Shown in pieces: positions 6,024-59,540 of a DNA stretch of 64,000 nt; the first letter of the stretch is position 1; every line of letters begins with the position of its first letter. The notes beneath the pieces are model-generated. The model saw nothing but the letters and a program-made list of their open reading frames with translations. It was not told the DNA's origin and did no database searches. Source of the stretch: Octopus sinensis (lineage: Eukaryota); the NCBI RefSeq assembly GCF_006345805.1, contig NC_043024.1:10106001-10170000 (forward strand). Reading direction: 5' to 3'. Made by a program: the position numbers and the translations under genes.

Positions 6024-6377
6024 ATTTCGTATATATACATATATATATATATTTCCTGTGTGCACATAGATTTTATTAAGTGCCACATGCAAGAATGATG
6101 ATTCTGTAGCTTATACCAAAATGAAACTAGTTCTATGTAGGTCGGCAAAGACTTTGCTTTGATGCTACGAGAGGAAAATTTATGTCAAACTTACCATTCC
6201 TCTTGAAAATAAAAATATTCAGCGTTGGAAGGAAATCGTTTCAAGTTTTAGCCATTTCTTTATTTTGGCAATAACGGTGTCACGGTTGATAAGACACCCT
6301 CTAAATAATTATCCGGTAACAGTTTGCTTAATCCGTCACCGCCTTTGCTGTAGATTAGTGCTTTTCTATATATATAT

Positions 6378-6436
<59 letters not shown>

Positions 6437-6469
6437 TGTGTGTATATATATATATATATTTATACTCTC

Positions 6470-6803
6470 TCTTTTCTCTTTACTCTTTTACTCTTTTCAG
6501 TCATTTGACTGCGGCCATGCTGGAGCACCGCCTTTTAGTCGAGCAACTCGACCCCGGGACTTATTCTTTTGTAAGTCCAGTACTTATTCTATCGGTCTCT
6601 TTTGCTGAACCGCTAAGTGACGGGGACATAAACACACACTAGCATCGGTTGTCAAGCAATGCTAGGTGGACAAACACAGACACACAAACAATTCTATCGG
6701 TCTCTTTTGCCGAACCGCTAAGTGACGGGGGACGTAAACACACCAGCATCGGCTGTCAAGCAATGCTAGGGGGGACAAACACAGACACAAAAACATAGAC
6801 ACG

Positions 6804-6850
<47 letters not shown>

Positions 6851-7020
6851 CATATATACGACGGGCTTCTTTCAGTTTCCGTCTACCAAATCCACTCACA
6901 AGGCTTTGGTCGGCCCGGACTATATAGCAGAGACACTTGGCCAAGATGCCACGCAGTGGGACTGAACCCGGAACCATGTGGTTGGTAAACAAGCTACTTA
7001 CACACAGCCACGCCTGCGCC
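6470..7020 (-). mobile_element. SINE-A with an internal duplication of the 103-bp unit
   Basis: Junction cacacaaacaattctatcggtctc (6681-6704) is the reverse complement of the array junction at 48-1990. Confidence 0.85.
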
Positions 7021-7114
<94 letters not shown>

Positions 7115-7125
7115 GTGGTGGTGTG

Positions 7126-7163
<38 letters not shown>

Positions 7164-7435
7164 TGTGTTGTGTGTAGCTATGTATGTATATATATGTATA
7201 TATAGTATAATATGTATGTATAGTATGTATGTATTAGAAAAGAACTACCATGTAGCTATTCAACAATGATATACTTAAATCATACCATATAGAAAAAAAT
7301 TAAAGATACGATAAAACATTTACCTAGAACTAAATAAAGTACAAAGTAATAAATAAATAGTATATAATTAGTGTATATATATACATATATGCCCCTGCGT
7401 TGGGGTGGATAATATATCCTGATGTCTCTTTAGAC

Positions 7436-7992
7436 CAGTGCTTTTCAAACTTTTTGCTGGAGCGGAACCCCAAGGAAACATTCCACTGGCTCGAGGAACC
7501 CCTGTGCAATAATTTAATAGTCTTATGCACACATATCTGCACAGGAGAATTAAAAATTACTGTCGATTTTAGCAGTTTTGTAACTTCTGCGGAACCCTAA
7601 GGTTCCGAGGAACCCTGCTTGAAAACCACTAATAAGGTGGTGCCTTTAAGTTAGAATGGCCTGGGCCAATAATGGCCGAAACCTATCAGAGTATCAAAGT
7701 ATATAATTTATAATATATATATATATATATCTATATAATATATATATTATATATTATATCTATATATATATCAGTGCTTTTCAAACTTTTTACTGGAGCG
7801 GAACCCCAAGGAGGAAACATTCCACTGGCTCGAGGAACCCCTGTGCAATAATTTATAGTCTTATGCACACATATCTGCACAGGAGAAATAAAAATTACTG
7901 CCGATTTTAGCAGTTTTGTAACTTCTTGCGGAACCCCTGGACTGTACTGACAGAACCCTAAGGTCCCGCGGAACCCTGGTTGAAAACCACTG
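7436..7992. mobile_element. Two hAT MITEs in direct orientation (7436-7631, 7772-7992) around a short cargo and (TA)n
   Basis: Both copies have CAGTG TIRs. Outer flanks ctttagac / ctgtagat match at 6 of 8 positions. Confidence 0.75.
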
Positions 7993-8856
7993 CTGTAGAT
8001 TAACCTGGATAATAAAAGGCGGCTAAATCTGACATGCTAGAAACAGGTTTTCGAAATTTTGATACGGATTACCAAAGGAAAGAAATTTGGATCTTTTTTT
8101 AGATAAGATCCCAAATAAGTTCTTTAAATACTTCGAAATCAAATAGGGCGCACCCGTACCTTAAATAAGCAACCGGCAAGCAGTCAATTCACGTGCTAGA
8201 AATAGCAGCCGAATCTCACACAAACTCTTTTTCCCCACATATTTTTTTTTGTAATTTATTTTTTCATATACGATTCATAGAAGTCGATTGTATCGTATTT
8301 TTTATTTTTTTTTATTTTGGAAAAAGCTATTCGTAGGGGTGAGGATGAGTTTCGACAAAAATCCCAAAACTGGTCGGATTCGTTTCTTGGCGACAAAAAT
8401 TTCAGAGAAATTTCCCGCGGTAAAAACTCATCTATTATATATACTCTTTTACTTGTTTCAGTCGTTTGACTGCGGCCATGCTGGAGCACTGCCTTTAGTC
8501 GAGCAAATCGACCCCGGGACTTATTCTTTGTAAGCCCAGTGCTTATTCTATCGGTCTCTTTTGCCGAACCGCTAGGTGACGGGGACGTAAACACACCAGC
8601 ATCGGTGTCAAGCAATGCTAGGGGGACAAACACAGACACACAAACACACACACACACACATATATATATATATTAATATATATACATATATATATATATC
8701 AATATTATATATATATATACAACATATATATATATATTACATATATATATATAAAATTATAAATGAGGGTGAAAATCGATATTAATTTAAATACCGTCAA
8801 TTTAACACCAAGTGGCTTAGCACAAAAAAACTACGGAGGAAATACAAATTTATACA

Positions 8857-11116: not shown

Positions 11117-11173
11117 ACCTATCCATTCTTGTTGCTTCTTTCTCGCGTATATATATATATTATAATATATATG

Positions 11174-11285
11174 ATATTAATTAGAGACAATTGTCTCTAA
11201 TTAATATTATATAATATTTTGCTATAAAATTGGATTCAATCCTAAATCTGATTTTTCCCTGTAAATTGGATTTATTCCCTATTAT
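11174..11285. other. Collapsed copy of the 53.8-kb palindrome family (perfect 34-bp palindrome plus extension)
   Basis: atattaattagagacaa|ttgtctctaattaatat, followed by the reverse complement of ~53797-53870. Confidence 0.8.
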
Positions 11286-11290
11286 ATTAT

Positions 11291-11335
<45 letters not shown>

Positions 11336-11586
11336 ATATTATATATATATATATATTATATATACTCTTTAATCTCTTTTACTTGTTTCAGTCATTTGAC
11401 TGCGGCCATGCTTGAGCAACCGCCTTTATAGTCGAGCAAATCGACCCCAGGATTTTATTCTTTGTAAGCCTAGTACTTATTCTATCGGTCCCTTTTGCCG
11501 AACCGCTAAGTTACGGGGATGTTAACACACCAGCATCGGTTGTCAAGCGATGTTGGCGGAGGGGGCAATACAACACACAAACATAC

Positions 11587-18489: not shown

Positions 18490-19075
18490 ATTAATTTTTT
18501 GGCTCAAAAAGCAAAAAGCAAGGCCATGTAGAGGGACATGGTGTTATGTACAGGGTGGTGTTCATGCAAAGAGTTCAGGCCATTTCTGGTCAAGGGAGAC
18601 TTTGAACCGAGCGGTCGTCGGCATCTTCACTATCTCGTCCGGCAGCTTATTCCACGGATCCACAACCCGGATGGAGAAAGCCCCTCTCCTTCGATTGAGA
18701 TGAAATCGTTGCAGATAGAGCTTTTTGAAGTGACCCCACAGCCGACGCTCTGGAGCAGGAGTGAAGAACAGCTCTTTCGAGAGGTTACACTTTCCGCTTA
18801 TGATGTTGTGAGCAAGAATGAGATCACCATGGCGTCGTCGTTTTTCTAGAGAATAAAGGTCGAGCGTCTTCAGCCTTTCTTCATAAGACAAATGCTTGAG
18901 ACCAAGAACCATGTGGGTAGCCAGCTTCTGGACTCTTTCGAGATGATGTATGTCTTTGAGGAGATAAGGACAAGAGGCTTGAATCCTGTACTCCAATATG
19001 GGTCTCACCAGCGTGACATAGAGCGGTAGGAATATGGCTGCCGTGAGCATTCCGAATGACCATCGAATCAAGAAC
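18490..19075 (-). mobile_element. CR1/L2-type LINE 3' fragment (ORF2 C-terminus)
   Basis: LYVTLVRPILEY...LERVQKLAT...LSYEERLKTLDLYSLEKRR...F..RVVDPWNKLP are typical CR1 post-RT motifs. Confidence 0.88.
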
Positions 19076-31129: not shown

Positions 31130-32005
31130 GCGATTAAATTGACCTCAGTATGAAACTGGTACTTAATTTATAAACCCCGAAAAGATGAAAGGCAAAGTCA
31201 ACCTCAGAGGAATTTGAACTCAGAACGTAAAGACGGATGAAATACCTATTTCTTTATTACCCACAATGGGACAAACAAGGACAGACATAGGTATTAAGTC
31301 AATTACATCGACCCCAGTGCGTAACTGGCACTTAATTTATCGACCCCGAAAGGATGAAAGGCAAAGTCGACCTTGGTGGAATTTGAACTCAGAACGTAAC
31401 AGCAGACGAAATACCTATTTCTTTACTACCCACAAGGGGCTAAACACAGAGGGGACAAACAAGGACAGACATAGGTATTAAGCCGATTACATCGACCCCA
31501 GTGCGTAACTGGCACTTAATTTATCGACCCCGAAAGAATGAAAGGCAAAGTCGACCTCGGCGGAATTTGAACTCAGAACGTAACGGCAGACAAAATACCT
31601 ATTTCTTTATTGCCCACAAGGGGCTAAACACAGAGGGGACAAACAAGGACAGACATAGGTATGAAGTCGATTACATCGACTCCAGTGTGTAACTGGTACT
31701 TAATTTATCGACCCCGAATGGATGAAAGGCAAAGTCGACCTTGGTGGAATTTGAACTCAGAACGTAACAGCAGACGAAATACCTATTTCTTTACTACCCA
31801 CAAGGGGCTAAACACAGAGGGGACAAACAAGGACAGACAAACGGATTAAGTCGATTACATTGACCCCAGTGCGTAACTTCTACTTAATTTATCGACCCCG
31901 AAAGGATGAAAGGCAAAGTCGACCACGGCAGAATTTGAACTCGGAACGTAACGACAGACAAAATACCGCAAAGCATTTCGCCCGGTGTGCTAATCTTTCT
32001 GCCTT
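31130..32005 (-). repeat. SINE-B tandem array (~5 units)
   Basis: Units joined at aaatacctatttcttt. One head remains at the right end. Confidence 0.85.
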
Positions 32006-39823: not shown

Positions 39824-41489
39824 TATATATATATATGTAGGTCCCGGTTGAGTCGGGGTTAACCACAGTAAATAAGGTACTCAATACATAGCAGAGTAAA
39901 TTAATTTATTTTATAGAAGGAGCTTCTACAGGACTAGAACTGTTTCATTTGAATGAAACAGTTCTAGTCCTGTAGAAGCTCCTTCGATAAAATATATATA
40001 TATATATATGTATATATATAGGTATGTGTGTGTATGTGTTTGTGTGTCTGTGTTTGTCCCCTTAGCACTGCTTGACAACCGATGCTGGTGTGTTTATGTC
40101 CCCGTCACTTAGCGGTTAAGGGGATAATTAGAAGGTAATTATAGGTGCAGGTGTGGTTGAGTGGTAAGAAGTTTGCTTCCCAGCCCCCATGGTTCCAAAC
40201 ATGTGGGGCCAGGTTCAATCCTTCTGACTTCTAAAACAGCCCTGGGCCAACCAAATCCATGTGAGTAAGGAACACAGAGAAGCTGAAAGATACCTATTTC
40301 TTTACTACCCACAAGGGGCTAAACATAGAGGGAACAAACAAGGACAGACATAGGTATTAAGTCGATTACATCGACCCCAGTGTGTAACTGGTACTTAATT
40401 TAGCGACCCCCGAAAGGATGTCTTCTACTATAGCCTCAGGGAGATCAAACCCTTGAGTGGATTTGGGAGACAGAAACTAAACGAAGCCCATTGTATATAT
40501 GTTTGTTGTTTCTTTACTGCCCACAAGGGGCTAGAAACGGAGGGGAGAAACAAGGACAGACAAACGGATTAAGTTGATTAACTGGTACTTAATTTATCGA
40601 CCCCGAAAGGATGAAAGGCAAAGTCGACCTTGGTGGAATTTGAACTCAGAACGTAACGGCAGACGAAATACCTATTTCTTTACTACCCACAAGAGGCTAC
40701 ACACAGAGGGGACAAACAAGGACAGACAAACGGATTAAGTTGATTATAATGACCCCAGTGTGTAACTGGTACTTATTTAATCGACCCCAAAAGGATGAAA
40801 GGCAAAGTTGACCTCGCGGAATTTGAACTCAAAATTTAACGGCAGACGAAATACTGCTAAGCATTTCACTCAGCGTGCTAACGATTTTGCCAGCACGCCG
40901 CCTTCAATATATTATATGTATGTTTGTGTATATGTACATGTATGTGTGTGTCCGTGTGTCCATCCTCATTTTGACGTTGTGCGATAGTTGTAAGTGAGTA
41001 TCCCTGTCATACAAGCAGTGATATTCAGTTCCAATCATCATCATTATCATCATCGTTTAATGTCCGCTTTCCATGCTAGCATGGGTTGGACGGTTCAACT
41101 GGGGTCTGGGAAGCCCGAAGGCTGCACCAGGCCCAGTCATCATCTGGCGGTGTTTTCTACAGCTGGAATGCCCTTCCTAACGCCAACCACTCCGTGAGTG
41201 TAGTGAGTGCTTTTTTATGAAAAAACATGTCGGGCCATGGGAAAACATTACGTTACCTGGAGGGTGAGGAACCGGATGGGAACACAACTGCTAAACAGTA
41301 CAGCTACCTTGTCGAACACCCTAAAAAGTTGTGTATGGCATAACAACTCAGCAGAAATATGCATGGAAGGTACATAGAGCTGATTGCATTCAGATATTGA
41401 GGAATGACTCATCCCCTGCCCTTTATAGAGCAACAAGGGTACCTCAGGTTCTTTTTAAAAACCCATATATTTCCCTGGTTGCATTTCGC

Positions 41490-44110
41490 ACCAGCACCAC
41501 CAGCACCACCAGCACTACCACCAGCACTACCACCACCACCACCACCACCACCAGCACTACCATCACCACCACCATCACCACCACCACACTACCACCAGCA
41601 CTACCATCAGCACACCACCAGCACTACCATCACCACTACCATCACCACCACACCACCACCAGCACCACAACCACCACCACCACCACCACCACCCCACCAC
41701 CATTCACCACCACCACACTCACCATCACCACCACCACCACCACCATCACCACCACCACTACCACCCCACTACCACTACCCCACCACCATCACCACACCAC
41801 CCACCACCACCACCAACCACCATCACCACCACCACCACCACCAGCACCATCAGCACCACCCACCACCACCACCACCACCAACCACCACCAACCACCATCA
41901 GCCAACCACCACCACCACACACCACCACCACCACCACCACCCCACCACCAACCCACCACCCACCACCACCCACCACCCACCACCACCATCACCACCACCA
42001 CCACCCCACAGCCACCATCAGCAACCACCACCACCACACCACCACCACCACCACCACCACCACCACACCACCACCACCACCACCATCACCACCACCACCA
42101 CCACCATCACCACCACCACTACCACCACCACTACCAATACCACCACCATCACCACCACCACACCACCACCACCACCACCATCACCACCACCACCACCACC
42201 AGCACCATCAGCACACCACCACCACCACCACCACACCACCACCACCACCATCAGCACCACCACCACCATCACCACCACCACCCACCACCACCATCAACCA
42301 CCACCACCAACCACCAGAGCACCAATCAGCACCACCACACCACCACCACCACCACCACCATCACCACCAGCACCATCAGCACCACCACCAGCACCACTAC
42401 CACCACCACCACCATCAGCACCACCACCACCACCACCAGCACCATCAGCACCACCAACTACCACCACCACACCATCACCACCAGCACCATCACCACCACC
42501 ACCATCACCACACCACCACCACCACCACCCCACCACCACCACCATCACCACCACCACCACACCAGCACCATCAGCACCACCACCACCACCACCACCACCA
42601 CCACCACCACCACCACCACCCACCACCACCACCACCCCACCACCCCACCACCACCACCCATCACCACCACCACACCACCAGCACCATCAGCACCACCACC
42701 ACCACCACCATCAGCCACCACACCACCACCACCACCACCACCACCACCACCATCACCACCACCACCACCACCAGCACCATCAGCACCACCACACCACCAC
42801 CACCACCACCACCACACACCACACCACAACCACCACCACCATCACCACCACCACCACCACCCATCACCACCACCCACTACCACCACCACTACCACTACCA
42901 CCACCATCACCACCACCACCACCACCACCACCACCACCATCACCACCCACACCACCACCAGCACCATCAGCACCACCACCACCACACCACCACCACCACC
43001 AACCCACCACCATCAGCACCACCACCACCATCACCACCACCACCACCACCACCATCACCACCACACCACCACCAGCACCATCGCCACCACCACCACCACA
43101 CCACCACCACCATCACCACCAGCACCATCAGCACCACCACCAGCACCACTACCACCACCACCACCATCAGCACCACCACCACCACCACCAGCACCCCATC
43201 AGCACCACCACTACCACCACCACCATCACCACCAGCACCATCACCACCACCACCCATCACCACCACCACCACCACCACCACCCCACACCACCAACCCCAT
43301 CCACCACCCCACCACCACCAGCACCATCAGCACCACCACCCACCACCACATCAGCACCACCACCACCACCACCACCACCCCACCACCACCACCACCACCA
43401 TCAGCACCCCCACCACCACCAGCACCATCAGCACCACCCACCACCAGCACCACCACCAGCACTACCATCACCATCACCACCATCACCACCACCACCACCA
43501 CCACCACACCCACCATCAGCACTACCATCCACCACCACCACCATCACCACCACCATCATCACCATCAGCACTACCATCACCACCACCACCATCACCACCA
43601 CCATCATCACCACTACCACCACCACCACCAACACCACCAACCACCACCACCACCATCAGCACCACCACCACCACCACAACCACCATCAGCACTACCATCA
43701 CCACCACACCACACCACCACCACCACCACCACCTCAGCACTACATCACCACCACCACCATCACCACCACCACCACACACCACCACCACCATCACCACCAC
43801 CACCACCACCACCACCCACCACCACCATCAGCACTACCATCACCACCACCACCATCACCACCACCATCATCCCACTACCACCATCACCACCACACACCAC
43901 CACCACCACCATCACCACCACCACCACCACCACCACCACCATCACCACACCACCACCCCCACCACCACCACCACCATCAGCCACTACCATCCACCACCCC
44001 ACCACCACCACCACCACCACCACCCTCAGCACTACCATCACCACCACCACCATCACCACCACCATCATCACCACTACCACCACCACCACCACCACCACCA
44101 CCACCACCAT

Positions 44111-44141
<31 letters not shown>

Positions 44142-44203
44142 AGCACCACCACCACCACCACCAGCACCATCAGCACCACCACTACCACCACTACCACCAC
44201 CAT

Positions 44204-44234
<31 letters not shown>

Positions 44235-45250
44235 AGCACCACCACCACCACCACCAGCACCATCAGCACCACCACTACCACCACTACCACCACCATCAGC
44301 ACCACCACCACCACCAACCAGCACCATCAGCACCACCACCACCACCACCAGCACCATCAGCACCACCACTACCACCACTACCACCACCATCAGCACCACC
44401 ACTACCACCACTACCACCACCATCAGCACCACCACCACCACCACCACTACCACCACTACCAGCACCACCACCAGCACCACCAGCACCACCACCACCATCA
44501 CCACCACCACCACCACCACCACCACCACCACCACCCCACCACCACCACCACCACCACCACCACCACCACTACCACCATCACCACCACCACCACCACCACC
44601 ACCATCAGCACTACCATCACCACCACCACCACCACCACCACCACCACCACCACCACCACCATCAGCACTACCATCACCACCACCACCACCACCACCACCA
44701 CCATCAGCACTACCATCACCACCACCACCATCACCACCACCACCATCACCACCACCACCACCACCATCAGCACATCACCACCACCACCACCACCACCACC
44801 ACCCACCACCATCAGCACTACCATCACCACCACCACCACCACCACCACCACCACCACCATCAGCACTACCATCACCACCACCACCACCACCACCACCACC
44901 ACCACCATCAGCACTACCATCACCACCACACCATCACCACCACCATCATCACCACTACCACCACCACCACCACCACCACCACCACCACCATCAGCACCAC
45001 CACTACACCAATACCACACCATCAGCACCACCACCACCACCACCACCATCAGCCACAACCACCACCACCACCAGCACCATCAGCACCACCACTACCACCA
45101 CTACCACCACCATCAGCACCACCACCACCACCACCACTACCACCACTACCAGCACCACCACCAGCACCACCGCACCAACACCACCATCACCACCACACCA
45201 TCACACCACCACCAACCACCACCACCATCACCACCACCACACCACCACTG
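41490..45250. repeat. ~3.75-kb imperfect (CAC)n trinucleotide tract in ESD intron 5
   Basis: Almost pure cac/cat/cag/tac triplets. The long ORFs here arise from base composition. Confidence 0.95.
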
Positions 45251-45447
45251 AGCATACGGCATGTTCAGTAGGGGGTCAAACACCATAGCGAACAGTCGCA
45301 TAGGGTCCTTCTGTTCCAGACCGTGAAAGATTACCATAAAAGTTTAATCTAAAATCAGTGTGAAATTTTTTAAAGGCTTTGTTTTTTTTAGGGGCATGAA
45401 GGGACAAGGGATGGCAAAGGGTCAAAGAAAAGAAATTTCTGACTCAC

Positions 45448-46075: not shown

Positions 46076-46349
46076 CTGTAAAATGTGAAGGACAACAGTA
46101 ATACAAACAACTATATCCCTTCTTTCCTGAGCGTCAATAATACTTTAATTGTTCCACGTCCTGCGTTGCTGTGTTTTTTTCTCTTTTTTCTGTGTTTTCT
46201 TGTTTGGATTAACTTTATATATATATATATATATATACTGAGCTGAGACCCCCTTCGGTCATGACTGACCATGGGATTGCACCTAGAAAGTTACCCTCCA
46301 AGGTACAAGTTCGGGTAAGGTTGTTTATGGAATACCAGCAGTCGCCCAT

Positions 46350-50964: not shown

Positions 50965-51183
50965 CAGTGCTTTTCAAACTTTTTGCTAGAGTGGAACCCC
51001 AAGGAGAGATTCCACTGGCTCGAGGAACCCCTCTGCAATAATTTAATAGTCATATGCACACATATCTGCACAGGAGAATTAAAAATTACTGCAGATTTTA
51101 GAACTTTTGTAACTTCTTGCGGAACCCCTGGACTGTACTGGCGGAACCCCAAGGTTCCGCAGAACCCTGGTTGAAGACCACTG
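50965..51183. mobile_element. hAT MITE (219 bp)
   Basis: CAGTG TIRs; TSD gtctaagg / gcctaagg (7 of 8). Confidence 0.85.
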
Positions 51184-52481: not shown

Positions 52482-52552
52482 CTGGAATGTTTGAAGACTT
52501 TCTGGAAGCCTCCAAAACATTTGTTCGATGATACCTGTTCAAGATTACTCAT
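52482..52552 (-). CDS. ESD: ESD first coding exon: MSNLEQVSSNKCFGGFQKVFKHS
   Basis: SSNKCFGGxQKVF motif; donor AG|gtaaac. An acceptor (ttttgtcag) 22 nt upstream of the ATG implies an upstream non-coding exon. Confidence 0.92.
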
Positions 52553-53721
52553 TATTACTTTCAAACTAAGAAACCTGACAAAAGTAGAAAAGAAACAACA
52601 GAATGCATGAAAATTCAAGGAATAATGAGAGCAGCCAAGTCATTTAACTATATATATATACATACAGCATATTGTGTGTGTATATCTGTACGCATACATA
52701 CATATACATAAATACATACACACATACACACACACACACACATACATACATTCATGCATGCATACATACATAAATACATACATACATACATACGTATGTA
52801 TGTATATATACGTCCCCGTAACTTAGCGGTTCGGCAAAAGAGACCAATAGAATAAGTACTGGGCTTACAAAGAATAAGTCCCGGAGTCGATTTGCTCGAC
52901 TAAAGGCGGTGCTCCAGCATGGCCGCAGTCAAATGACTGAAACAAGTAAAAGAGTAAAGAGTAAGAGTCTATTGAGGTAAAAAAAACATTCTGTGCCGTA
53001 TGAAAATGTCCCTCGTTTAAGAAACAGATTAGGTTTATTTACATTTGTGAAGAAAAAAGGATACCCTTCCCCCCACCCCTAACCCTAACCCTAACCCTAA
53101 AAGAGATTGAAATGCAATAGATCGATACTAGGGTCATAATTATGGGTGACAATTTCATATGACACCGCTAGAAAAACTGCCGGTCAAACCGAAAAGATCC
53201 CTAACCCTAACCAACCCTAACCCTAAAACAGATTGAAATGCAATAGATCGATACTAGGGTCATAATTATGGGTGACAATTTCATATGACACTGCTAGAAA
53301 AAACTGCCGTTCAAACGGAAAAGATCCCAGCTCGGAGCTAGAAAAACAAATCTTCTTTTGAATAGCGTTAAAGGGTTAAAGAAACCACGACCACCACCAC
53401 TATACAGCGGGGAGGGTTGCTGATGTTAATCCTTAAGCATTCAGATTACTCAGTCAAATGCAATACTCATATAAATTACATTGCTTTGAATTCATCATGC
53501 ATTATTTTGGAGCTTAGATCTTTTGATGAGGTTACTGTTAATTTTCGTAATGATATGGTAGGGTTGGTATTTAATCAACCATGCTAACAGGTTGATGGTG
53601 TTACCACAGCCCGTTTTCCCAGTGAGTAAACATCTAGAGCAGAGGTTTTCAACCAGGGTTCTGCGAGCCAGTGGAATGTTTCCATGGGGTTCCGCTCCCG
53701 CAAAAAGGTTGAAAAGCACTA

Positions 53722-53789
<68 letters not shown>

Positions 53790-53867
53790 ATAAATATTAG
53801 GGAATAAATCCAAATTTACATGGAAAATCAGATTTAGGATTGAATCCAATTTTATAGTAAAATATTA

Positions 53868-54157
53868 TATAATATTAATAGAGACAAAACCACTATTTTG
53901 CAAATCAAACAAAGAAGACTTAATCCAATACATAAAAAAATTTTAATATAAATTAAATAAAATTATATTCGCCACTACAATTGTTTCATGTCTCTTCTCA
54001 GGACATTCATCAGGTGGATTTCAGATGAATGTCCTGAGAAGAGACATGAAACAATTGTAGTGGCGAATATAATTTTATTTAATTTATATTAAACTTTTTT
54101 ATGTATTGGATTAAGTCTTTCTTTGTTTGATTTGCAAAATAGTGGTTTTGTCTCTAA

Positions 54158-54168
<11 letters not shown>
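53868..54168. other. ~300-bp palindrome with ~12-nt loop
   Basis: Arms ...ggacattcatc / gatgaatgtcc..., pairing outward to aatattaatagagacaa / ttgtctctaattaatatt. Confidence 0.92.
53972..54017 (-). ncRNA. Type I hammerhead ribozyme
   Basis: Reverse complement reads CCAC-CUGAUGA-AUGUC-cugagaaga-GACAU-GAAAC-AAUU-GUA-GUGG. Stems I and II are perfect, the core is complete, and loop III is palindromic. Confidence 0.88.
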
Positions 54169-54200
<32 letters not shown>

Positions 54201-54744
54201 TGGTTTTCAACCAGGGTTCCGCCAGTACAGTCCAGGGGTTCCGCAAGAAGTTACAAAACTGCTAAAATCGGCAGTAATTTTAAAGTCTCCTGTGCAGATA
54301 TGTGTGCATAAGACTATTAAATTATTGCAGAGGGGTTCCTCGAGCCAGTGGAATGTTTCCTTGGGGTTCCGCTCCAGCAAAAAGGTTGAAAAGCACTGAT
54401 CTAGAGATTCATGGGGTATATGACACAATAAACAGCTTAGAAAGTACGGTGTTTTATCAACTTTAATTAGGTTACTAATTATAATTTATGCCAGCTGATA
54501 CAAAGACTGTCTGTCTTATCTGTGACAAAGTATTTACACAGAGTCAGTCTACCTGTCATATACAATAGATCTCCTTTAAGTCTGACATTTTCACAGCCTT
54601 TTTTTTACTTGGAGAGGAAGGTAAGAAAGAAGGGGATTTTTCACTGCCACCACCAGCACCACCACCAGTAAATTTATTGAAAGGAGGAGGAGTAGAAGGA
54701 GCAGAGCAATGACAGACCAAGTGAAAAGGCTTATAGTACTAAGG

Positions 54745-56170
54745 GCGGAAGGCGGTGAGCTGGCAGAAGCGTTAGCACGCCGGGCGAAATGCTTAGCGGT
54801 ATTTCGTCTGTCGCTACGTTCTGAGTTCAAATTGTTTATCCTCTCTGTGTTTAGCCCCTTGTGGGTAGTAAAGAAATAGGTATTTCGTCTGCCGTTACGT
54901 TGTGAGTTCAAATTCCACTGAGGTCGACTTTGCCTTTCATCCTTTCGGGGTCGATAAATTAAGTACCAGTTACGCACTGGGGTCGATATAATCGACTTAA
55001 TCCGTTTGTCTGTCCTTGTTTGTCCTCTCTGTGTTTAGCCCCTTGTGGGTAGTAAAGAAATAGGTATTTCGTCTGCCGTTACGTTGTGAGTTCAAATTCC
55101 ACTGAGGTCGACTTTGCCTTTCATCCTTTTGGGGTCAATTAAATAAGTACCAGTTACACACTGGGGTCAATATAATTGACTTAATCCGTTTGTCTGTCCT
55201 TGTTTGTCCTCTCTGTGTTTAGCCCCTTGTGGGTAGTAAAGAAATAGGTATTTCGTCTGCCGTTACGTTGTGAGTTCAAATTCCACTGAGGTCGACTTTG
55301 CCTTTCATCCTTTTGGGGTCAATTAAATAAGTACCAGTTACACACTGGGGTCGATATAATCGACTTAATCCGTTTGTCTGTCCTTGTTTGTCCTCTCTGT
55401 GTTTAGCCCCTTGTGGGTAGTAAAGAAATAGGTATTTCGTCTGCCGTTACGTTGTGAGTTCAAATTCCACTGAGGTCGACTTTGCCTTTCATCCTTTCGG
55501 GGTCGATTAAATAAGTACCAGTTACGCACTGGGGTCGATATAATCGACTTAATCCGTTTGTCTGTCCTTGTTTGTCCTCTCTGTGTTTAGCACCTTGTGG
55601 GTAGTAAAGAAATAGGTATTTCGTCTGCCGTTACGTTGTGAGTTCAAATTCCACTGAGGTCGACTTTGCCTTTCATCCTTTCGGGGTCGATTAAATAAGT
55701 ACCAGTTACGCACTGGGGTCAATATAATTGACTTAATCCGTTTGTCTGTCCTTGTTTGTCCTCTCTGTGTTTAGCCCCTTGTGGGTAGTAAAGAAATAGG
55801 TATTTCGTCTGCCGTTACGTTGTGAGTTCAAATTCCACTGAGGTCGACTTTGCCTTTCATCCTTTCGGGGTCGATTAAATAAGTACCAGTTACGCACTGG
55901 GGTCAATATAATTGACTTAATCCGTTTGTCTGTCCTTGTTTGTCCTCTCTGTGTTTAGCCCCTTGTGGGTAGTAAAGAAATAGGTATTTCGTCTGCCGTT
56001 ACGTTCTGAGTTCAAATTCCACTGAGGTCGACTTTGCCTTTCATCCTTTCGGGGTCGATAAATTAAGTACCAGTTACGCACTGGGGTCGATATAATCGAC
56101 TTAATCCGTTTGTCTGTCCTTGTTTGTCCCCTCTGTGTTTGGCCCCTTGTGGGTAGTAAAGAAATAGGTA
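54745..56170 (+). repeat. SINE-B tandem array (one head, a truncated unit, 7 x 184 bp)
   Basis: Junction aaataggtatttcgtc at 54880, 55064, 55248 ... 56168. Confidence 0.9.
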
Positions 56171-56789
56171 TTTCGTCCTCCTTTATGGTCTGATTTGAAA
56201 TTTTACCGAATAAATTTTGTAAAGAAAAAAAAATAATTAACCAAAGTTATAAAGAAAATGCTGAACAGGAATATTAAAGCGAGTTTAGTATTCGATCAGT
56301 GGTTTATTTTATCGACATCGTATGGGCAAAATGGAAAGCTGACCTTGACAGAATATTTAAAAAAAAATATAGCTAGAGGTATTTATCTGGGGTTGATAAA
56401 ATAGCGATTCTTCCAACGTCTGCGAGAATGTTTAATTGAATATTTAGAATCTCAGTTAAATACTGAGATTTGAGTTATTTATTATACACATATGGTGCTC
56501 AAAACAAGTGAGAGGTGGGGGAAACGGTCGTTTCCGTTAGAAACAGAGAGAGAAACCCGATAAACCCTAAACTAAATACTATAAGGGGTTTAAAGTCCAA
56601 CTACTACGCTATAAATCAGTCTAGCTCATTCACTAAAAACTAACGGTTAACATTTTATAGGCCGCAAACCGACGAAGCCTGCTAAATATACCACCCCAAA
56701 ATCATCGCAGGACGTGTTAGATAATATGATCTTGTTTGCTGTACATAAGAGAAAGATAATTAAGGGTCGGAACGTTTTTGGTTTATAGG

Positions 56790-59540
56790 CTGTACGTATA
56801 AAAGCGTGATGTAAGCCGGTTCACAGACGTATTTAACGGGGGTCGATTTGGGGCTTATTAATTTGTTACACCACGATAATATTGATAATTAAACTGTGTA
56901 AATAATTAAATACTTAATATAGTTAGCGTTTTTTCTTCTACACGAGCAGAGGAAGTTAATATATAAAAAGATACAGAGAAATAAAGGAACTGTATGCCGG
57001 TTCATAGATGTATTTAACCGGGGTCGATTTGGGGCTTATAAATTATTTACACCAAGATAATATTGATAATTAAACTGTGTAAATAATTAAACACTTAATA
57101 TAGTTAGCGTTTTTCTTCTACACGAGCAGAGGAAGTTAATATATAAAAAGATACAGAGAAATAAAGGAACTGTATGCTGGTTCATAGATGTATTTAACCG
57201 GGGTTGATTTGGGGCTTATAAATTTGTTACACCAAGATAATATTGATAATTAAACTCTGTAAATAACACAACGTAACAATTTTCGGATCTTTTGGGTTTG
57301 AACGGCAGTTTTTAACATAATTTCTAGGTAACTAAAAAATGTTAAACTTTGTATACTGGTAGAATGTGTTTATAAAACATCTTTTTCTCTTGGCTTTATT
57401 GAGAAAATTCTATAGATTGTAAGATATTTGTTGGTGTGTTTATGTCCCCGTCACTTACAAAGAATAAGTGCTGGGGTCGAGTTGCTGGATTAAAGGTGGT
57501 GCTCCAGCATGGCTGCAGTCAAATGACTGAAACAAGTAAAAGAGAGAGAGTATGTGTTACATTGTGTAATTTGATCTTGTTTGCTGTACATAACAGAAAG
57601 ATAATTAGGGTCGGAACGTTTTTGGTTTATAGGCTGTACATATAAAAGCGTGATGTAAGCCGGTTCATAGATGTATTTAACCGGGGTTGACTTGGGGCTT
57701 ATAAATTTGTTACACCAAGATAATATTGACAATTAAACAGAGGAATCTTTTCATTTTGAACGGCAGACGTCAACACAATTTCTAGTTAACTAAACACTTT
57801 TAAACTTCGTATAGTGGTAGAATGTGTTCATAAAACATCTTTTTCTCTTGGCTTTATTGAGAAAATTCTATAGTTTGTAAGATATTTTGTCTGAAAATCC
57901 GAGCATTTCGGCAATTTTAACCAATCGATTACCTCCATTCAACTAAAATTATTTGCTGCGTCTAAAACTGAGACAACATCCTGTAACTAACCCTAAACCT
58001 AACCCTAACCCTAAATTTTTTTTCTTAATTGTTAAATTAATTTAATTCCATTGCTTTAGTTTTTTTTTACTCGCGTAACAATTAAATTAATTTAACAAGT
58101 AAGAAAAAAAAATTTAGAGTTAGGGGGTAGGTTTAGGGTTAGTTACAGGATGTTGTCTCAGTTTTAGACGCAGCAAATGATTTTAGCTCAAAAGAGAGCA
58201 TAGGATTGGTTAAAATTCGAAAAATTAAACTACGTTAAACAAACAAATTACAGTTTTCTCAAGAAAACCAAGAGAAAAAAATGTTTTATTTTGACACATT
58301 CTACCAGTATATGAAGTTTTAAAGAGTTTAGTTAACTAGAAATTGTGTTGAAATCTGGCCTTCAAAAGGAAAAGATTTTAAAATGTTTTATTTTTACACA
58401 TTCTACCAGTATACGAAGTTTTAAAGTGTTTAGTTAACTAGAAATTGTGTTGAAATCTGGCCTTGAAAAGGAAAAGATCCAAAAAGGTTTTATTTTGACA
58501 CATTCTACCAGTATACGAAGTTTTAAAGTGTTTAGCTAACTAGAAATTGTTGAAATCTGGCCTTGAAAAGGAAAGGATCCAAAAATGTTTTATTTTGACA
58601 CATTCTACCAGTATACGAAGTTTTAAAATGTTTAGTTAACTAGAAATTGTGTTGAAATCTGGCCTTGAAAAGGAAAAGATCCAAATTGTGTAAATAATTA
58701 AACACTTAATATAGTTAGCGTTTTTCTTCTACACGGGCAGAGGAAGTTAATATATAAAAAGATACAGAGAAATAAAGGAACTGTATGCCGGTTCATAGAT
58801 GTATTTAACCGGGGTTGATTGGGGTTTATAAATTTGTTACACCAAGATAATATTGATAATTAAACTGTGTAAATAATTAAATACTTAATATAGTTAGCGT
58901 TTTTCTTCTACACGAGCAGAGGAAGTTAATATATAAAAAGATACAGAGAAATAAAGGAACTGTATGCCGGTTCACAGATGTATTTAACGGGGTTGATTTG
59001 GGGCTTATAAATTTGTTACACCACGATAATATTCACAATTAAACTGTGTAAATAATTAACCCTTTAGTGTTTAAACTGGCCAAATCCGGCCCAATATATT
59101 CTACATATTTTATATTCAAACTGGCCATATCCAACCTCTCACACCTAACCTACATTGACAGTCTAAAAATAAACAATCACATCATTGAAACCTCAAAGCT
59201 ATGAGATAATGCATGATTAATTAAAAACAATTTAAATAAAAAAGCATTATATTTAACAGTAATCTGAACACTAAAGGGTTAAACACTTAATATAATTAGC
59301 GTTTTTCTTCTACACAAGCAGAGGAAGTTAATATATAGAAAGATACAGAGAAATAAAGGAACTGTATGCCGGTTCATAGATGTATTTAACCGGGGTTGAT
59401 TTGGGGCTTATAAATTTGTTACACCAAGATAATATTGATAATTAAACTGTGTAAATAATTAAACACTTAATATAGTTAGTGTTTTTCTTCTACACAGGCA
59501 GAGGAAGTTAATATATAAAAAGATACAGAGAAATAAAGGG
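56790..59540. repeat. AT-rich ~180-bp satellite-like units interrupted by MITEs
   Basis: attgataattaaact recurs at 56881, 57062, 57242 and again at 58.7-59.5 kb. Confidence 0.85.
57742..58682. mobile_element. Fold-back relative of the GGATC MITE with long inverted arms; right end tandemly repeated
   Basis: Arms contain gcgtctaaaactgagacaacatcctgtaactaaccctaa and its reverse complement. ~102-bp end repeats at 58380-58682. Confidence 0.75.

What the first reader, a model, noticed from the sequence alone, without database searches (positions are those of the whole stretch)
53640..54398. Candidate composite hAT transposon carrying a hammerhead-ribozyme palindrome
A single perfect TSD, ATCTAGAG (Charlie-like NTCTAGAN target), flanks the outer ends of two MITE copies. 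Both inner ends read TAGTG/CACTA instead of CAGTG/CACTG and have no TSD. The simplest reading is that the 759-bp unit moved as one piece, so a DNA transposon carried a ribozyme cassette. An alternative is insertion into one MITE with duplication.
Basis: partly seen in the sequence, partly recalled or inferred. Interest (0 to 1): 0.7.

Follow-up and report, generated by a model that had tools for sequence, protein, structure and literature searches.

The report
Octopus MITE pair enclosing retroelement palindrome
Upstream of an octopus esterase D gene, small hAT-type DNA transposons sharing one insertion scar enclose AT-repeat DNA into which a separate, independently mobile hairpin-forming retroelement with a hammerhead-like motif has lodged; it is an instructive but fairly ordinary pile-up of mobile elements.

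Summary
The sequence facts are correct. A perfect 8-bp duplication ATCTAGAG flanks two same-orientation MITEs (82 and 201 bp). These enclose (TA)n tracts and a 278-bp palindrome. The window is Octopus sinensis, and the unit lies 1.1-1.9 kb upstream of esterase D.

Comparison with O. vulgaris changes the reading.
- The older form probably has three MITEs. The middle one has its own TSD (ATATATAT/ATATATAC).
- O. sinensis most likely lost 325 bp by recombination. Its 'TAGTG' inner end is therefore inherited from that nested copy.
- The two frame MITEs share a private variant, and both abut ATATATAC on their inner sides. This looks like one insertion scar, permuted.

The palindrome is a head-to-head dimer of a short retroelement family ('X').
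- X has a constant 3' end and variable 5' ends, and it always sits in (TA)n.
- One copy is present in O. vulgaris but absent from both O. sinensis sequences, so X seems able to move by itself.

The hammerhead core is present on the minus strand only. It has an A-U 10.1-11.1 pair and a 4-bp helix I, and it gets no Rfam hit.

Best reading: a MITE-bounded composite, probably moved as one piece, with X and the third MITE nested independently. Transport of the ribozyme-like element by the DNA transposon is neither needed nor shown. I could not search a whole genome or an outgroup.

The parts
53632..53639 (.). Left copy of the 8-bp target-site duplication ATCTAGAG.
   Evidence: It is identical to 54399-54406. 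The same 8-mer flanks the unit in O. vulgaris and in scaffold L003.
53640..53721 (+). M1: an 82-bp internally deleted hAT-type MITE. It keeps the left TIR plus about 11 bp and the last 66 bp. Its ends read CAGAG...CACTA.
   Evidence: positions 17-81 align to positions 136-200 of the 201-bp copy. It shares the R-end variant AAAAAGGTTG with M3/MITE2 only. The deletion junction occurs nowhere else in the loci held.
53722..53789 (.). (TA)n tract that begins with ATATATAC (53722-53729). In O. vulgaris the same 8-mer precedes the left end of M3.
53790..54023 (-). Long arm of retroelement X (sense strand is minus). Its 3' end is ...CCCTAATATTTATTATTAT next to (TA)n. The 'U' segment at 53797-53878 is unique to this arm. 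Its 5' end carries the hammerhead-like motif.
   Evidence: The same 3' part is found in (TA)n tracts at window 11141-11365, L002 15756-15975 and L008 18316-18636.
53970..54023 (-). Hammerhead-like motif (type I, minimal). Helix I is CCAC/GUGG. The core is CUGAUGA at 54013-54007. Helix II is AUGUC/GACAU. GAAA lies at 53987-53984. Helix III is AC/GU with the palindromic loop AAUU. The predicted cleavage is after GUA, between 53976 and 53975.
   Evidence: There is no Rfam hammerhead hit. The predicted dimer forms an 8-bp intermolecular helix III, ACAAUUGU.
54024..54156 (+). Short arm of X. It is an inverted copy that starts inside the core (GAUGA...) and lacks U. Together with 53879-54011 it forms the palindrome.
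   Evidence: 94% over 311 bp including indels; the arm blocks are 99-100%. The same short-arm/long-arm layout, with other junction points, occurs in copies 2 and 5.
54157..54197 (.). TA-rich tract (TTAATATTA then (TA)n) that ends in ATATATAT next to MITE2.
54198..54398 (+). MITE2, 201 bp, TAGTG...CACTG. It is inferred to be a recombinant: the left junction comes from the nested middle MITE (M2') and the body comes from the frame MITE M3 of O. vulgaris.
   Evidence: 199/201 identical to M3 of O. vulgaris, differing at base 1 and one other site; 96.6% identical to M2', with a 22-bp indel.
54399..54406 (.). Right copy of the TSD ATCTAGAG.

Best explanation
This is a nested cluster of mobile elements in the roughly 11-kb spacer between two divergently oriented esterase D paralogues of Octopus sinensis.

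1. The frame (inferred).
   - Two sister copies of a SPIN-like hAT MITE, M1 and M3, are separated by TA-rich DNA. The outer left end of M1 and the outer right end of M3 are bounded by a single 8-bp TSD, ATCTAGAG.
   - Most likely a MITE that had inserted into a TA tract (TSD ATATATAC) was duplicated in tandem by unequal exchange between the TA tracts on either side.
   - hAT transposase then used the outermost left and right ends to move the M-spacer-M block as one macrotransposon to the present site.

2. Nested arrivals (parts shown, order inferred).
   - A third MITE, M2', inserted into the inner TA tract with its own TSD.
   - A short non-autonomous retroelement, X, also lodged in the TA tract as a head-to-head (snap-back) dimer. 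That dimer is the palindrome.
   - X has a constant 3' end and variable 5' ends, always sits in (TA)n tracts, and is therefore inferred to target them.
   - X resembles Penelope-like-element derivatives and retrozymes. Its 5' part carries a minimal type-I hammerhead-like motif.

3. Later change (inferred from two species).
   - In the O. sinensis lineage, recombination between M2' and M3 removed 325 bp. This left the 759-bp two-MITE form in the window.

4. Function.
   - In this palindromic copy, any transcript that spans both arms would fold into a near-perfect 130-bp hairpin. The hammerhead would then not form, so the motif is most likely an inactive relic here.
For: Identity and setting
- The window is 100% identical to O. 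sinensis CM016886.1.
- ESD exon 1 lies at about 52484-52543 on the minus strand. The paralogue lies on the plus strand from window position ~63.7 kb.

MITE family
- Normal copies have 8-bp TSDs.
- The TIR CAGTGGTTTTCAACC is one base off the SPIN/hAT-N1 TIR CAGTGGTTCTCAACCT, whose TSD consensus is NYYTARRN (PMC3014272).

Frame
- The TSD is a perfect ATCTAGAG in both species and in a second scaffold.
- In O. vulgaris the inner flanks of M1 (right side) and M3 (left side) are both ATATATAC.
- M1 and M3 alone carry AAAAAGGTTG at the right end. Seven other independent copies carry T at that position.
- Only one of the other independent MITE insertions in hand sits in a TA tract. Two unrelated MITEs both landing on ATATATAC is therefore unlikely.
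- Macrotransposons bounded by two hAT elements in direct orientation are experimentally known in maize (cited in PMC3260210).

Nested M2'
- Its own TSD is ATATATAT/ATATATAC. Its body differs from M3 (96.6% identity plus a 22-bp indel).

Deletion in O. sinensis
- MITE2 equals the left junction of M2' followed by the body of M3.

X family
- Five copies were found, each inside (TA)n and with a shared 3' part. Four have no MITE next to them.
- The 5' ends vary. Copy 3 is a plain, non-inverted copy. Copies 1, 2 and 5 are inverted dimers with different junction points.
- Copy 3 is present in O. vulgaris. Both O. sinensis sequences have a clean (TA)n at that site.
- PLE insertions are described as 5'-truncated, often with an inverted 5'-truncated copy, and with a (TA)n insertion bias in Naiads. 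Canonical PLEs carry hammerheads in their pLTRs (PMC8557442; PMC4209133).

Hammerhead
- The core and helices are as listed under 'parts'. The predicted dimer has an intermolecular helix III (-25.6 kcal/mol, against -8.6 for the monomer).
- The full palindrome transcript folds at -199 kcal/mol.
Against: - No second copy of the composite, no donor locus and no empty site could be examined. Movement as one piece is therefore inferred only from the TSD pattern.
- The polarity of the three-MITE versus two-MITE difference rests on parsimony, without an outgroup.
- ATATATAC is a common end of TA tracts in this genome, so the identical inner flanks could be coincidence.
- The shared GGTTG could come from gene conversion between two repeats less than 1 kb apart. 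It is also the state seen in a related MITE from another organism.
- Pairwise divergence does not order the events: MITEs are 92-98% identical to each other and X copies 95-97%.
- The X-PLE link rests on architecture only. No reverse transcriptase partner was sought.
- Rfam does not recognise the hammerhead. The usually conserved G10.1-C11.1 pair is A-U here, and helix I has only 4 bp.
- Related X copies have a broken helix II.
- The presence/absence of copy 3 could be a TA-tract-mediated deletion rather than an insertion.
Confidence: 0.5

Rival explanations
1. The block, already containing the hammerhead palindrome, was mobilised as one piece by hAT transposase, so a DNA transposon carried a ribozyme-bearing cassette to this site.
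For: - A single perfect TSD bounds the block.
- X lies wholly inside the frame and is shared by both species, so it predates their split.
- Divergence data do not exclude X being as old as the MITEs.
Against: - X sits in (TA)n tracts at four other sites with no MITE beside it, and it is polymorphic between species. Independent nesting is therefore a sufficient explanation.
- Weak signal only: M1 versus M3 shows 6 mismatches in 71 aligned bases, against about 3 per 100 among X copies. This hints that the frame is older than X, but it is not significant.
- No other copy of the unit was seen in about 150 kb of sequence.
Confidence: 0.17
2. There was no composite transposition. A single resident MITE inserted at ATCTAGAG. 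It was later split or duplicated when DNA from another MITE sitting in a TA tract (TSD ATATATAC) was copied or recombined in. Possible routes are ectopic synthesis-dependent repair of a break inside the MITE, Campbell-type integration of a small circle carrying one MITE, or sister-chromatid/alternative hAT transposition ends capturing a TA-rich fragment. This is the modern form of the reader's 'insertion into one MITE with duplication'.
For: - The flank pattern (ta|M1|tb ... tb|M3|ta) is exactly what one crossover between a chromosomal MITE and a circular or ectopic MITE locus predicts.
- A second locus in the same window (6348-8000) shows ATCTACAG[complete MITE]-(TA)n...-(TA)n[last 10 bp of a MITE right end]ATCTACAG in both species. 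Duplications of MITE ends around TA-rich inserts therefore recur.
Against: - Under a simple crossover the right ends of M1 and M3 come from different parents, so the shared private GGTTG is not predicted.
- After a clean transposase excision the broken ends carry no MITE homology. A break inside the MITE or a rare circle integration is therefore needed.
- Locus 2 is explained equally well by a retroelement insertion with a 13-bp TSD, GAAAAGCACTRAT.
Confidence: 0.22
3. The block is a composite built from two unrelated MITEs that happened to insert near each other at a donor locus. In this reading the identical inner flanks and the shared variant are coincidence.
For: - The single TSD.
- TA tracts in this genome often end in ATATATAC.
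- The MITE target consensus nTnTAnAn fits (TA)n.
Against: - Only about one in eight other independent insertions lies in a TA tract.
- GGTTG is absent from seven other copies.
- Together these make independence several-fold less likely than a sister relationship.
Confidence: 0.1
4. The 'hammerhead' is a chance look-alike inside an AT-rich hairpin-forming repeat, and X is a foldback/MITE-type DNA element rather than a retroelement.
For: - No Rfam hammerhead hit at any threshold; only generic miRNA-hairpin hits.
- The 10.1-11.1 pair is A-U, and helix I has 4 bp.
- Helix II is broken in copies 3 and 4.
- Copies 1, 2 and 5 keep both outer ends while losing central sequence, as deletion derivatives of a TIR element would.
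Against: - A full CUGAUGA...GAAAC core, a 5-bp helix II, a 2-bp helix III with a palindromic 4-nt loop and a GUA site all in register. This occurs once in 128 kb scanned on both strands and matches the published description of metazoan minimal type-I hammerheads that act as dimers (PMC4209133).
- Copy 3 lacks the right-hand 'terminus' altogether yet keeps the 3' part. This fits 5'-variable retro-copies, not a TIR element.
Confidence: 0.3

Closest known systems
Ac/Ds macrotransposons of maize (two closely linked hAT elements in direct orientation that move with the DNA between them; Huang and Dooner 2008, as cited in PMC3260210)
   Same: - The outermost left and right ends of two hAT-family elements bound a block.
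- A single 8-bp TSD flanks the block.
- The inner ends lack matching TSDs of their own.
   Different: - Here the elements are 82-201-bp MITEs and the block is about 1 kb.
- Movement is inferred from one locus only.
- The two MITEs look like sister copies that share one older TSD (ATATATAC) on their inner sides. This suggests a tandem duplication in a TA tract before any move.
SPIN / hAT-N1-type (Charlie-like) hAT MITEs of vertebrates (PMC3014272)
   Same: - The TIR CAGTGGTT(T/C)TCAACC is nearly identical.
- The TSD is 8 bp and fits NYYTARRN / nTnTAnAn.
- Short non-autonomous copies.
   Different: - This is a cephalopod family with an imperfect right TIR (GTTTGAAAAGCACTG).
- No transposase source was identified here.
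- Superfamily assignment rests on the TSD length and TIR only.
Penelope-like elements and their non-autonomous derivatives (minimal hammerheads in pLTRs; non-LTR retrozymes) (PMC4209133, PMC8557442, PMC7229834, bioRxiv 10.64898/2026.07.22.740005)
   Same: - Type-I minimal hammerhead layout with a 2-bp helix III and a palindromic loop suited to dimers.
- 5'-truncated copies.
- An inverted 5'-truncated copy abutting the 5' end.
- Residence in (TA)n microsatellites without clear TSDs.
   Different: - No tandem arrays or pLTR-ORF structure were seen.
- The (TA)n bias is documented for Naiads, which lack canonical hammerheads.
- The 10.1-11.1 pair is A-U instead of G-C.
- No Rfam match.
- No RT/GIY-YIG partner was identified.
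Bacterial composite transposons (two IS copies bracketing cargo)
   Same: Two copies of a small element bracket foreign DNA and are mobilised through their outer ends.
   Different: - This is a eukaryotic cut-and-paste hAT system.
- The 'cargo' here is junk TA-rich DNA plus nested mobile elements, not genes.

Membership tests
hAT-superfamily MITE | 8-bp target-site duplication. | tested here: met
   Copies D, C and G have 8/8, 7/8 and 7/8 TSDs. The unit's TSD is 8/8. M2' has 7/8.
hAT-superfamily MITE | Short terminal inverted repeats of the CAG(T/G)G... type, and a target consensus of the nTnTAnAn / NYYTARRN kind. | tested here: met
   - The TIRs are CAGTGGTTTTCAACC / GGTTGAAAAGCACTG.
- They are one base off the SPIN/hAT-N1_AC TIR listed in PMC3014272.
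- TSDs observed: ATCTAGAG, GTGTAAGG, GYCTAAGG, ACCWAGAC, ATCTACAG, ATATATAY.
hAT-superfamily MITE | A related autonomous element that encodes a hAT transposase with matching ends. | not tested
   No hAT transposase ORF was looked for beyond the ORF list of the window. A whole genome is not searchable here.
Composite (macro)transposon | One TSD at the outer ends of two same-orientation elements, with neither element having its own TSD. | tested here: met
   The same holds in O. vulgaris for M1 and M3. The middle copy M2' does have its own TSD.
Composite (macro)transposon | Evidence of movement as a unit: further copies with different TSDs, or an empty orthologous or allelic site. | not testable with these tools
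   - No octopus genome is searchable.
- The only outgroup locus obtained (O. bimaculoides, L006) covers NDUFAF4, not this site.
- The unit is present in both O. sinensis sequences and in O. vulgaris.
- ORF look-ups of the flanks found nothing.
Hammerhead ribozyme (type I, metazoan minimal/dimeric) | Conserved core C3U4G5A6N7G8A9 ... G12A13A14, A15.1-U16.1, and cleavage after H17. | tested here: met
   The minus strand reads CUGAUGA ... GAAA-C-AAUU-G-U-A/. The plus strand has CAGAUGA and fails.
Hammerhead ribozyme (type I, metazoan minimal/dimeric) | Helix III of 1-2 bp with a small palindromic loop that allows dimers. | tested here: met
   ACAAUUGU is self-complementary. The predicted dimer forms it as an 8-bp helix. 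The criterion is taken from PMC4209133.
Hammerhead ribozyme (type I, metazoan minimal/dimeric) | Highly conserved G10.1-C11.1 pair, and a helix I of about 6 bp with loop contacts. | tested here: not met
   - The 10.1-11.1 pair is A-U.
- Helix I is CCAC/GUGG only.
- In copy 3 helix I is 8 bp, but the top pair of helix II is A.A.
Hammerhead ribozyme (type I, metazoan minimal/dimeric) | Match to a curated hammerhead covariance model. | tested here: not met
   There is no Hammerhead_1/3/II/HH9/HH10 hit at gathering score or at E<=10, even on a 76-nt slice.
Hammerhead ribozyme (type I, metazoan minimal/dimeric) | Self-cleavage. | not testable with these tools
   This needs in vitro transcription of monomer and dimer constructs.
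Penelope-like-element derivative / non-LTR retrozyme | Variable 5' truncation with a constant 3' end, and frequent inverted 5'-truncated partner copies. | tested here: met
   Copies 1, 2, 3, 4 and 5 were compared. The criterion is taken from PMC8557442.
Penelope-like-element derivative / non-LTR retrozyme | Insertion bias for microsatellites, (TA)n. | tested here: met
   All five copies lie inside (TA)n. The site that lacks copy 3 in O. sinensis is a plain (TA)n.
Penelope-like-element derivative / non-LTR retrozyme | Tandem head-to-tail repeats with one hammerhead per monomer (retrozyme), or a pLTR-ORF(RT+GIY-YIG)-pLTR parent that shares sequence. | tested here: inconclusive
   No tandem X arrays were found in about 150 kb. 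No PLE ORF was searched for. Membership is therefore not claimed, only resemblance.

The most novel reading that the evidence does not exclude
A hAT transposase moved a ~1-kb MITE-spacer-MITE macrotransposon that already contained the hammerhead-like retroelement. In that case a DNA transposon acted as a vehicle for a ribozyme-bearing retroelement in a cephalopod.

More generally, MITEs that land in (TA)n microsatellites would be duplicated by microsatellite exchange and then hop as dimers that capture whatever sits in the tract.
Probability: 0.15. Interest if true: 0.5.

Novelty: new member of a known kind. Interest (0 to 1): 0.3.

Why it matters
- If the frame did move as one piece, it would be a natural animal example of hAT macrotransposition. 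That process is otherwise documented mainly for maize Ac/Ds. It would also show how MITEs in microsatellites can start to capture DNA.
- The by-product may be of more use. Octopus has a short retroelement that resides in (TA)n tracts, carries a minimal hammerhead-like motif and forms snap-back palindromes. At least one copy differs between O. vulgaris and O. sinensis.
- Such elements create long perfect hairpins and unstable TA tracts close to genes. Here that is 1.1-1.9 kb upstream of esterase D. They also explain several structural differences between the two assemblies.
- None of this changes a general principle. It is a well-resolved case of nesting.

Tried and rejected
1. Rfam was run at gathering score on the whole window, and at E<=10 on 851 nt and on 76 nt. 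No hammerhead hit appeared. The miRNA hits merely reflect a perfect hairpin.
2. Exact-protein look-ups of ORFs in the left and right flanks, intended to fish out empty alleles, were not on record.
3. A first protein search with one ESD exon found no octopus protein. A multi-exon query did. Through cluster members, that gave the O. vulgaris locus and a second O. sinensis scaffold.
4. O. bimaculoides was only reachable at NDUFAF4, about 30 kb away. That locus has no copy of this MITE. No outgroup for the site was obtained.
5. One metagenome scan with a conserved MITE 29-mer returned a single related MITE from another organism. It was no help for copy census.
6. Models considered and rejected:
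   - Two independent in-situ MITE insertions. Each would need its own TSD.
   - A second MITE hopping into the first one's TSD copy. The middle 8-mer would have to be ATCTAGAG, but it is ATATATAC on both sides.
   - An inverted duplication that includes a MITE. MITE2/M3 is in direct, not inverted, orientation beyond the TIR.
   - A very long retroelement TSD spanning the whole MITE. The nicks would have to fall exactly at both MITE termini.
7. Relative dating of X against the MITEs by pairwise identity was inconclusive.
8. The spacer S' has no other copy in the window or in L002.
Full report
WHAT IS THERE

- ATCTAGAG occurs at 53632-53639 and again at 54399-54406.
- Directly inside the left copy lies MITE1 ('M1', 53640-53721, 82 bp, CAGAG...CACTA).
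- Directly inside the right copy lies MITE2 (54198-54398, 201 bp, TAGTG...CACTG). Both MITEs run in the same left-to-right orientation.
- M1 is an internally deleted copy. Its positions 17-81 align with positions 136-200 of MITE2.
- Between the MITEs lie, in order:
  - a (TA)n tract that starts with ATATATAC;
  - a non-palindromic segment I call U (53797-53878);
  - a palindrome (arms 53879-54011 and 54024-54156, blocks 99-100% complementary) with an asymmetric 12-nt centre;
  - a second TA tract.

The family is a genuine MITE family with 8-bp TSDs.
- The copy at 2148-2742 has GTGTAAGG on both sides and a SINE nested inside it.
- The copy at 50965-51183 has GTCTAAGG/GCCTAAGG.
- A copy beyond the window has ACCTAGAC/ACCAAGAC.
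- The TIR CAGTGGTTTTCAACC is one base off the SPIN/hAT-N1 TIR, and the targets fit the NYYTARRN-type consensus reported for those hAT families (PMC3014272).

WHERE IT IS

- An NDUFAF4 exon in the window is 99% identical to the Octopus vulgaris/sinensis protein.
- The window is 100% identical to O. sinensis CM016886.1.
- Esterase D (S-formylglutathione hydrolase) exons lie on the minus strand from about 29.2 kb to 52.5 kb. The unit is therefore 1.1-1.9 kb upstream of the ESD start codon.
- It sits in the spacer between this ESD gene and a divergently oriented ESD paralogue that starts near 63.7 kb.
- A second O. sinensis scaffold carries the identical unit.

WHAT THE SISTER SPECIES SHOWS

The O. 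vulgaris orthologue was reached through the ESD protein cluster. It has the same TSD copies, the same M1, the same TA tracts and the same palindrome, but three MITEs. Its layout is:

ATCTAGAG [M1 ...CACTA] ATATATAC-(TA)n-U-palindrome-(TA)n-ATATATAT [M2' TAGTG...CACTG] ATATATAC-S'(155 bp, of which 69 bp unique)-ATATATAC [M3 CAGTG...CACTG] ATCTAGAG

Three points follow.

1. M2' has its own 7/8 TSD (ATATATAT/ATATATAC). It differs from M3 by 3.4% plus a 22-bp indel. It is therefore an ordinary independent insertion into the TA tract.

2. The O. sinensis MITE2 is 199/201 identical to M3 but carries the left junction of M2' (ATATATAT|T...).
   - The economical reading is a 325-bp deletion in the O. 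sinensis lineage, by recombination between M2' and M3. The homology runs through the TA tract and the TIR.
   - The reverse would be a recent gain of about 325 bp that includes an old, diverged MITE. That needs more steps.
   - Without an outgroup this polarity is an inference (I put it at about 0.8).
The real inner end of the frame MITE M3 is canonical CAGTG.

3. The inner flanks of the two frame MITEs are the same 8-mer: M1|ATATATAC and ATATATAC|M3.
   - M1 and M3 are also the only copies with AAAAAGGTTG at the right end. Seven other independent copies have T at that position.
   - Only one of the other independent insertions in hand lies in a TA tract.
   - I therefore read the inner flanks as the two halves of one older hAT insertion scar, and M1 and M3 as sister copies.
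   - Coincidence cannot be excluded, because TA tracts here often end in ATATATAC. Gene conversion between neighbouring repeats cannot be excluded either.

THE PALINDROME IS A RETROELEMENT OF ITS OWN

The U segment and the arm sequence recur elsewhere, always inside (TA)n and never next to this MITE.
- Copy 2: window 11141-11365.
- Copy 3: O. vulgaris L002 15756-15975.
- Copy 4: L002 about 31640-31730.
- Copy 5: L008 18316-18636.

All copies share the same 3' part (...U...TTATTATTAT-(AT)n, reading on the hammerhead-sense strand) and differ at the 5' side.
- Copy 3 is a plain, non-inverted copy.
- Copies 1, 2 and 5 are head-to-head pairs. A U-bearing arm abuts an inverted arm that lacks U, and the junction point differs in each copy.
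- In copy 1 the short arm starts exactly where the long arm has run 12 nt further. This is what a snap-back (hairpin-primed) copy would look like, and it explains the 99-100% arm identity.

Copy 3 is absent from both O. sinensis sequences, which have a clean (TA)n at that site flanked by the same unique DNA. I read this as a recent insertion. A TA-mediated precise deletion is the alternative.

The combination of features is what has been described for Penelope-like elements.
- Those features are a constant 3' end, variable 5' truncation, inverted 5' partner copies and residence in TA microsatellites without clear TSDs (PMC8557442).
- The pLTRs of canonical PLEs carry minimal hammerheads (PMC4209133).
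- Animal non-LTR retrozymes are now argued to be non-autonomous PLE derivatives (bioRxiv 10.64898/2026.07.22.740005).
- I claim resemblance, not membership. I saw no tandem arrays and looked for no RT/GIY-YIG partner.

THE HAMMERHEAD

- On the minus strand the sequence reads 5'-AUCCAC CUGAUGA AUGUC-CUGAGAAGA-GACAU GAAAC AAUU GUA/GUGGCG.
- It has the full core, a 5-bp helix II, and a 2-bp helix III with the palindromic loop AAUU. Two molecules can therefore form an 8-bp helix III, ACAAUUGU.
- RNAcofold predicts exactly that dimer (-25.6 kcal/mol, against -8.6 for the monomer). This matches the published picture of metazoan minimal type-I hammerheads.
- A simple descriptor scan finds this motif only here in 128 kb on both strands.

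Evidence against the hammerhead:
- No Rfam hammerhead model matches, even on a 76-nt slice at E<=10.
- The normally conserved G10.1-C11.1 pair is A-U.
- Helix I has only 4 bp.
- In copies 3 and 4 helix II is damaged.
- The plus-strand arm has CAGAUGA, so the palindrome holds one candidate ribozyme, not two.
- A transcript spanning both arms would fold into a near-perfect hairpin (-199 kcal/mol), which would prevent the hammerhead fold.
- I rate 'genuine, at least ancestrally active, minimal hammerhead' at about 0.6, and 'active in this copy' as low.

HOW THE FRAME AROSE

Shown:
- One TSD bounds the outer ends.
- M1 and M3 have no TSD of their own.
- The inner flanks are identical.
- M1 and M3 share a private variant.

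Inferred best model (about 0.5, counting all variants in which transposase moved a MITE-bounded block):
- A MITE inserted into a TA tract (TSD ATATATAC).
- Unequal exchange between the TA tracts on either side duplicated it, together with the intervening DNA (TA tract + S').
- hAT transposase then used the outermost ends to insert the M-spacer-M block at ATCTAGAG, as Ac/Ds macrotransposons do.

Main rival (about 0.22):
- A single resident MITE at ATCTAGAG acquired the second copy and the spacer by recombination or repair with another MITE locus or a small circle.
- This predicts the same permuted flanks, but not the shared right-end variant.

A second locus in the window has ATCTACAG[complete MITE]-(TA)n...(TA)n-[AAAAGCACTA]ATCTACAG in both species (6348-8000).
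- It shows that MITE ends get duplicated around TA-rich inserts more than once.
- There, a retroelement insertion with a 13-bp TSD is an equally good explanation. It therefore does not discriminate between the models.

Whether X was already aboard when the frame formed cannot be decided. Pairwise identities overlap (MITEs 92-98%, X copies 95-97%). Because X moves by itself into TA tracts, independent nesting is sufficient.

The matching CACTA/TAGTG inner ends in the window lie within a 48-nt inverted repeat made of TIR plus TA tract. They may have been homogenised as part of the large quasi-palindrome. This is speculative.

VERDICT

A MITE-bounded composite is plausible. However, the two-MITE form is secondary, one 'odd' end belongs to a nested copy, and the hammerhead palindrome is an independently mobile retroelement rather than demonstrable cargo.
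- Everything here belongs to known kinds: hAT MITEs, macrotransposon-like composites, and PLE/retrozyme-like hammerhead repeats.
- Interest is modest.

LIMITS

- No whole octopus genome and no outgroup for this site could be searched.
- The decisive tests (other copies, empty site, donor locus) remain to be done.

Noticed in passing
L002 15756-15975 (O. vulgaris) vs window 46210-46240 and L003 16310-16350: A ~190-bp X copy (U plus the hammerhead-like part, not palindromic) sits in a (TA)n tract in an ESD intron of O. vulgaris. Both O. sinensis sequences have only (TA)n there. This is a presence/absence difference between sister species.
   Followed up: yes
window 6348-8000 (minus strand); L005 23391-24050: This is a second MITE locus with a permuted look: ATCTACAG[complete MITE]ATATATAT...(TA)n...ATAG[AAAAGCACTA]ATCTACAG. 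The true TSD partner lies 1.6 kb away, next to a 10-nt right-end fragment. It is either a 13-bp TSD (GAAAAGCACTRAT) of a retro-insertion or the same process as in the finding. O. vulgaris has a 1.15-kb deletion here that removes another MITE (7436-7631). That MITE itself has no TSD and has a TAGTG end.
   Followed up: partly
window 11141-11365 vs L005 21718-21905: X copy 2 has its palindrome reduced to TAGAGACAATTGTCTCTA. It is nearly identical in O. vulgaris, but there it is flanked by different sequence on both sides. This means either a local rearrangement at TA tracts or movement of an already palindromic copy. Unresolved.
   Followed up: partly
window MITE ends at 53721, 54198, 7631, 6356: Four of about 18 MITE termini carry the same terminal change (CACTG->CACTA, equivalent to CAGTG->TAGTG). 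This is far more than the 2-8% divergence seen elsewhere in the copies, and it is not at a CpG. I have no explanation.
   Followed up: no
window 54832-56177: A 184-bp tandem array (7.3 copies, 97% matches) starts 430 bp to the right of the unit. Related arrays occur elsewhere in the ESD region (L001 ~28.2-31.4 kb). A further 180-bp repeat lies at 56810-57266.
   Followed up: no
window 53077-53321: Telomere-like CCCTAACCCTAACC motifs lie at the start of each copy of a 126-bp-spaced duplicated 109-nt segment (90% identical), 300 bp to the left of the unit.
   Followed up: no
window 41300-45300: A ~4-kb extremely skewed low-complexity tract (GC 0.62, GC skew -0.92) lies inside an ESD intron. It produces spurious 1300-aa T/H/P-rich ORFs on the plus strand.
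   Followed up: no
window 29150-52550 (minus) and L008 10001-25643 (= window ~63.7-79.4 kb, plus): Two esterase D paralogues are arranged head to head. The one in the window is annotated 'LOW QUALITY PROTEIN' in O. sinensis and is merged into a 453-aa model in O. vulgaris. A MITE inside a SINE (50965-51183) has a counterpart in the paralogue (L008 16025-16243), so the gene duplication postdates that insertion.
   Followed up: no
L007 (JGI metagenome contig Ga0187751_132576) 899-1082: A related MITE with perfect TIRs (CAGTGGTTTTCAGCC ... GGTTGAAAACCACTG) was found in an environmental contig that is clearly not octopus. The family, or a close relative, therefore exists in another organism.
   Followed up: no
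window 18562-19071 (minus): A 169-aa ORF resembles, from memory, the C-terminal part of a LINE-type reverse transcriptase (…LVRPILEY…ERVQK…LSYEERLK…). I did not check it against Pfam, and I did not compare it with X.
   Followed up: no
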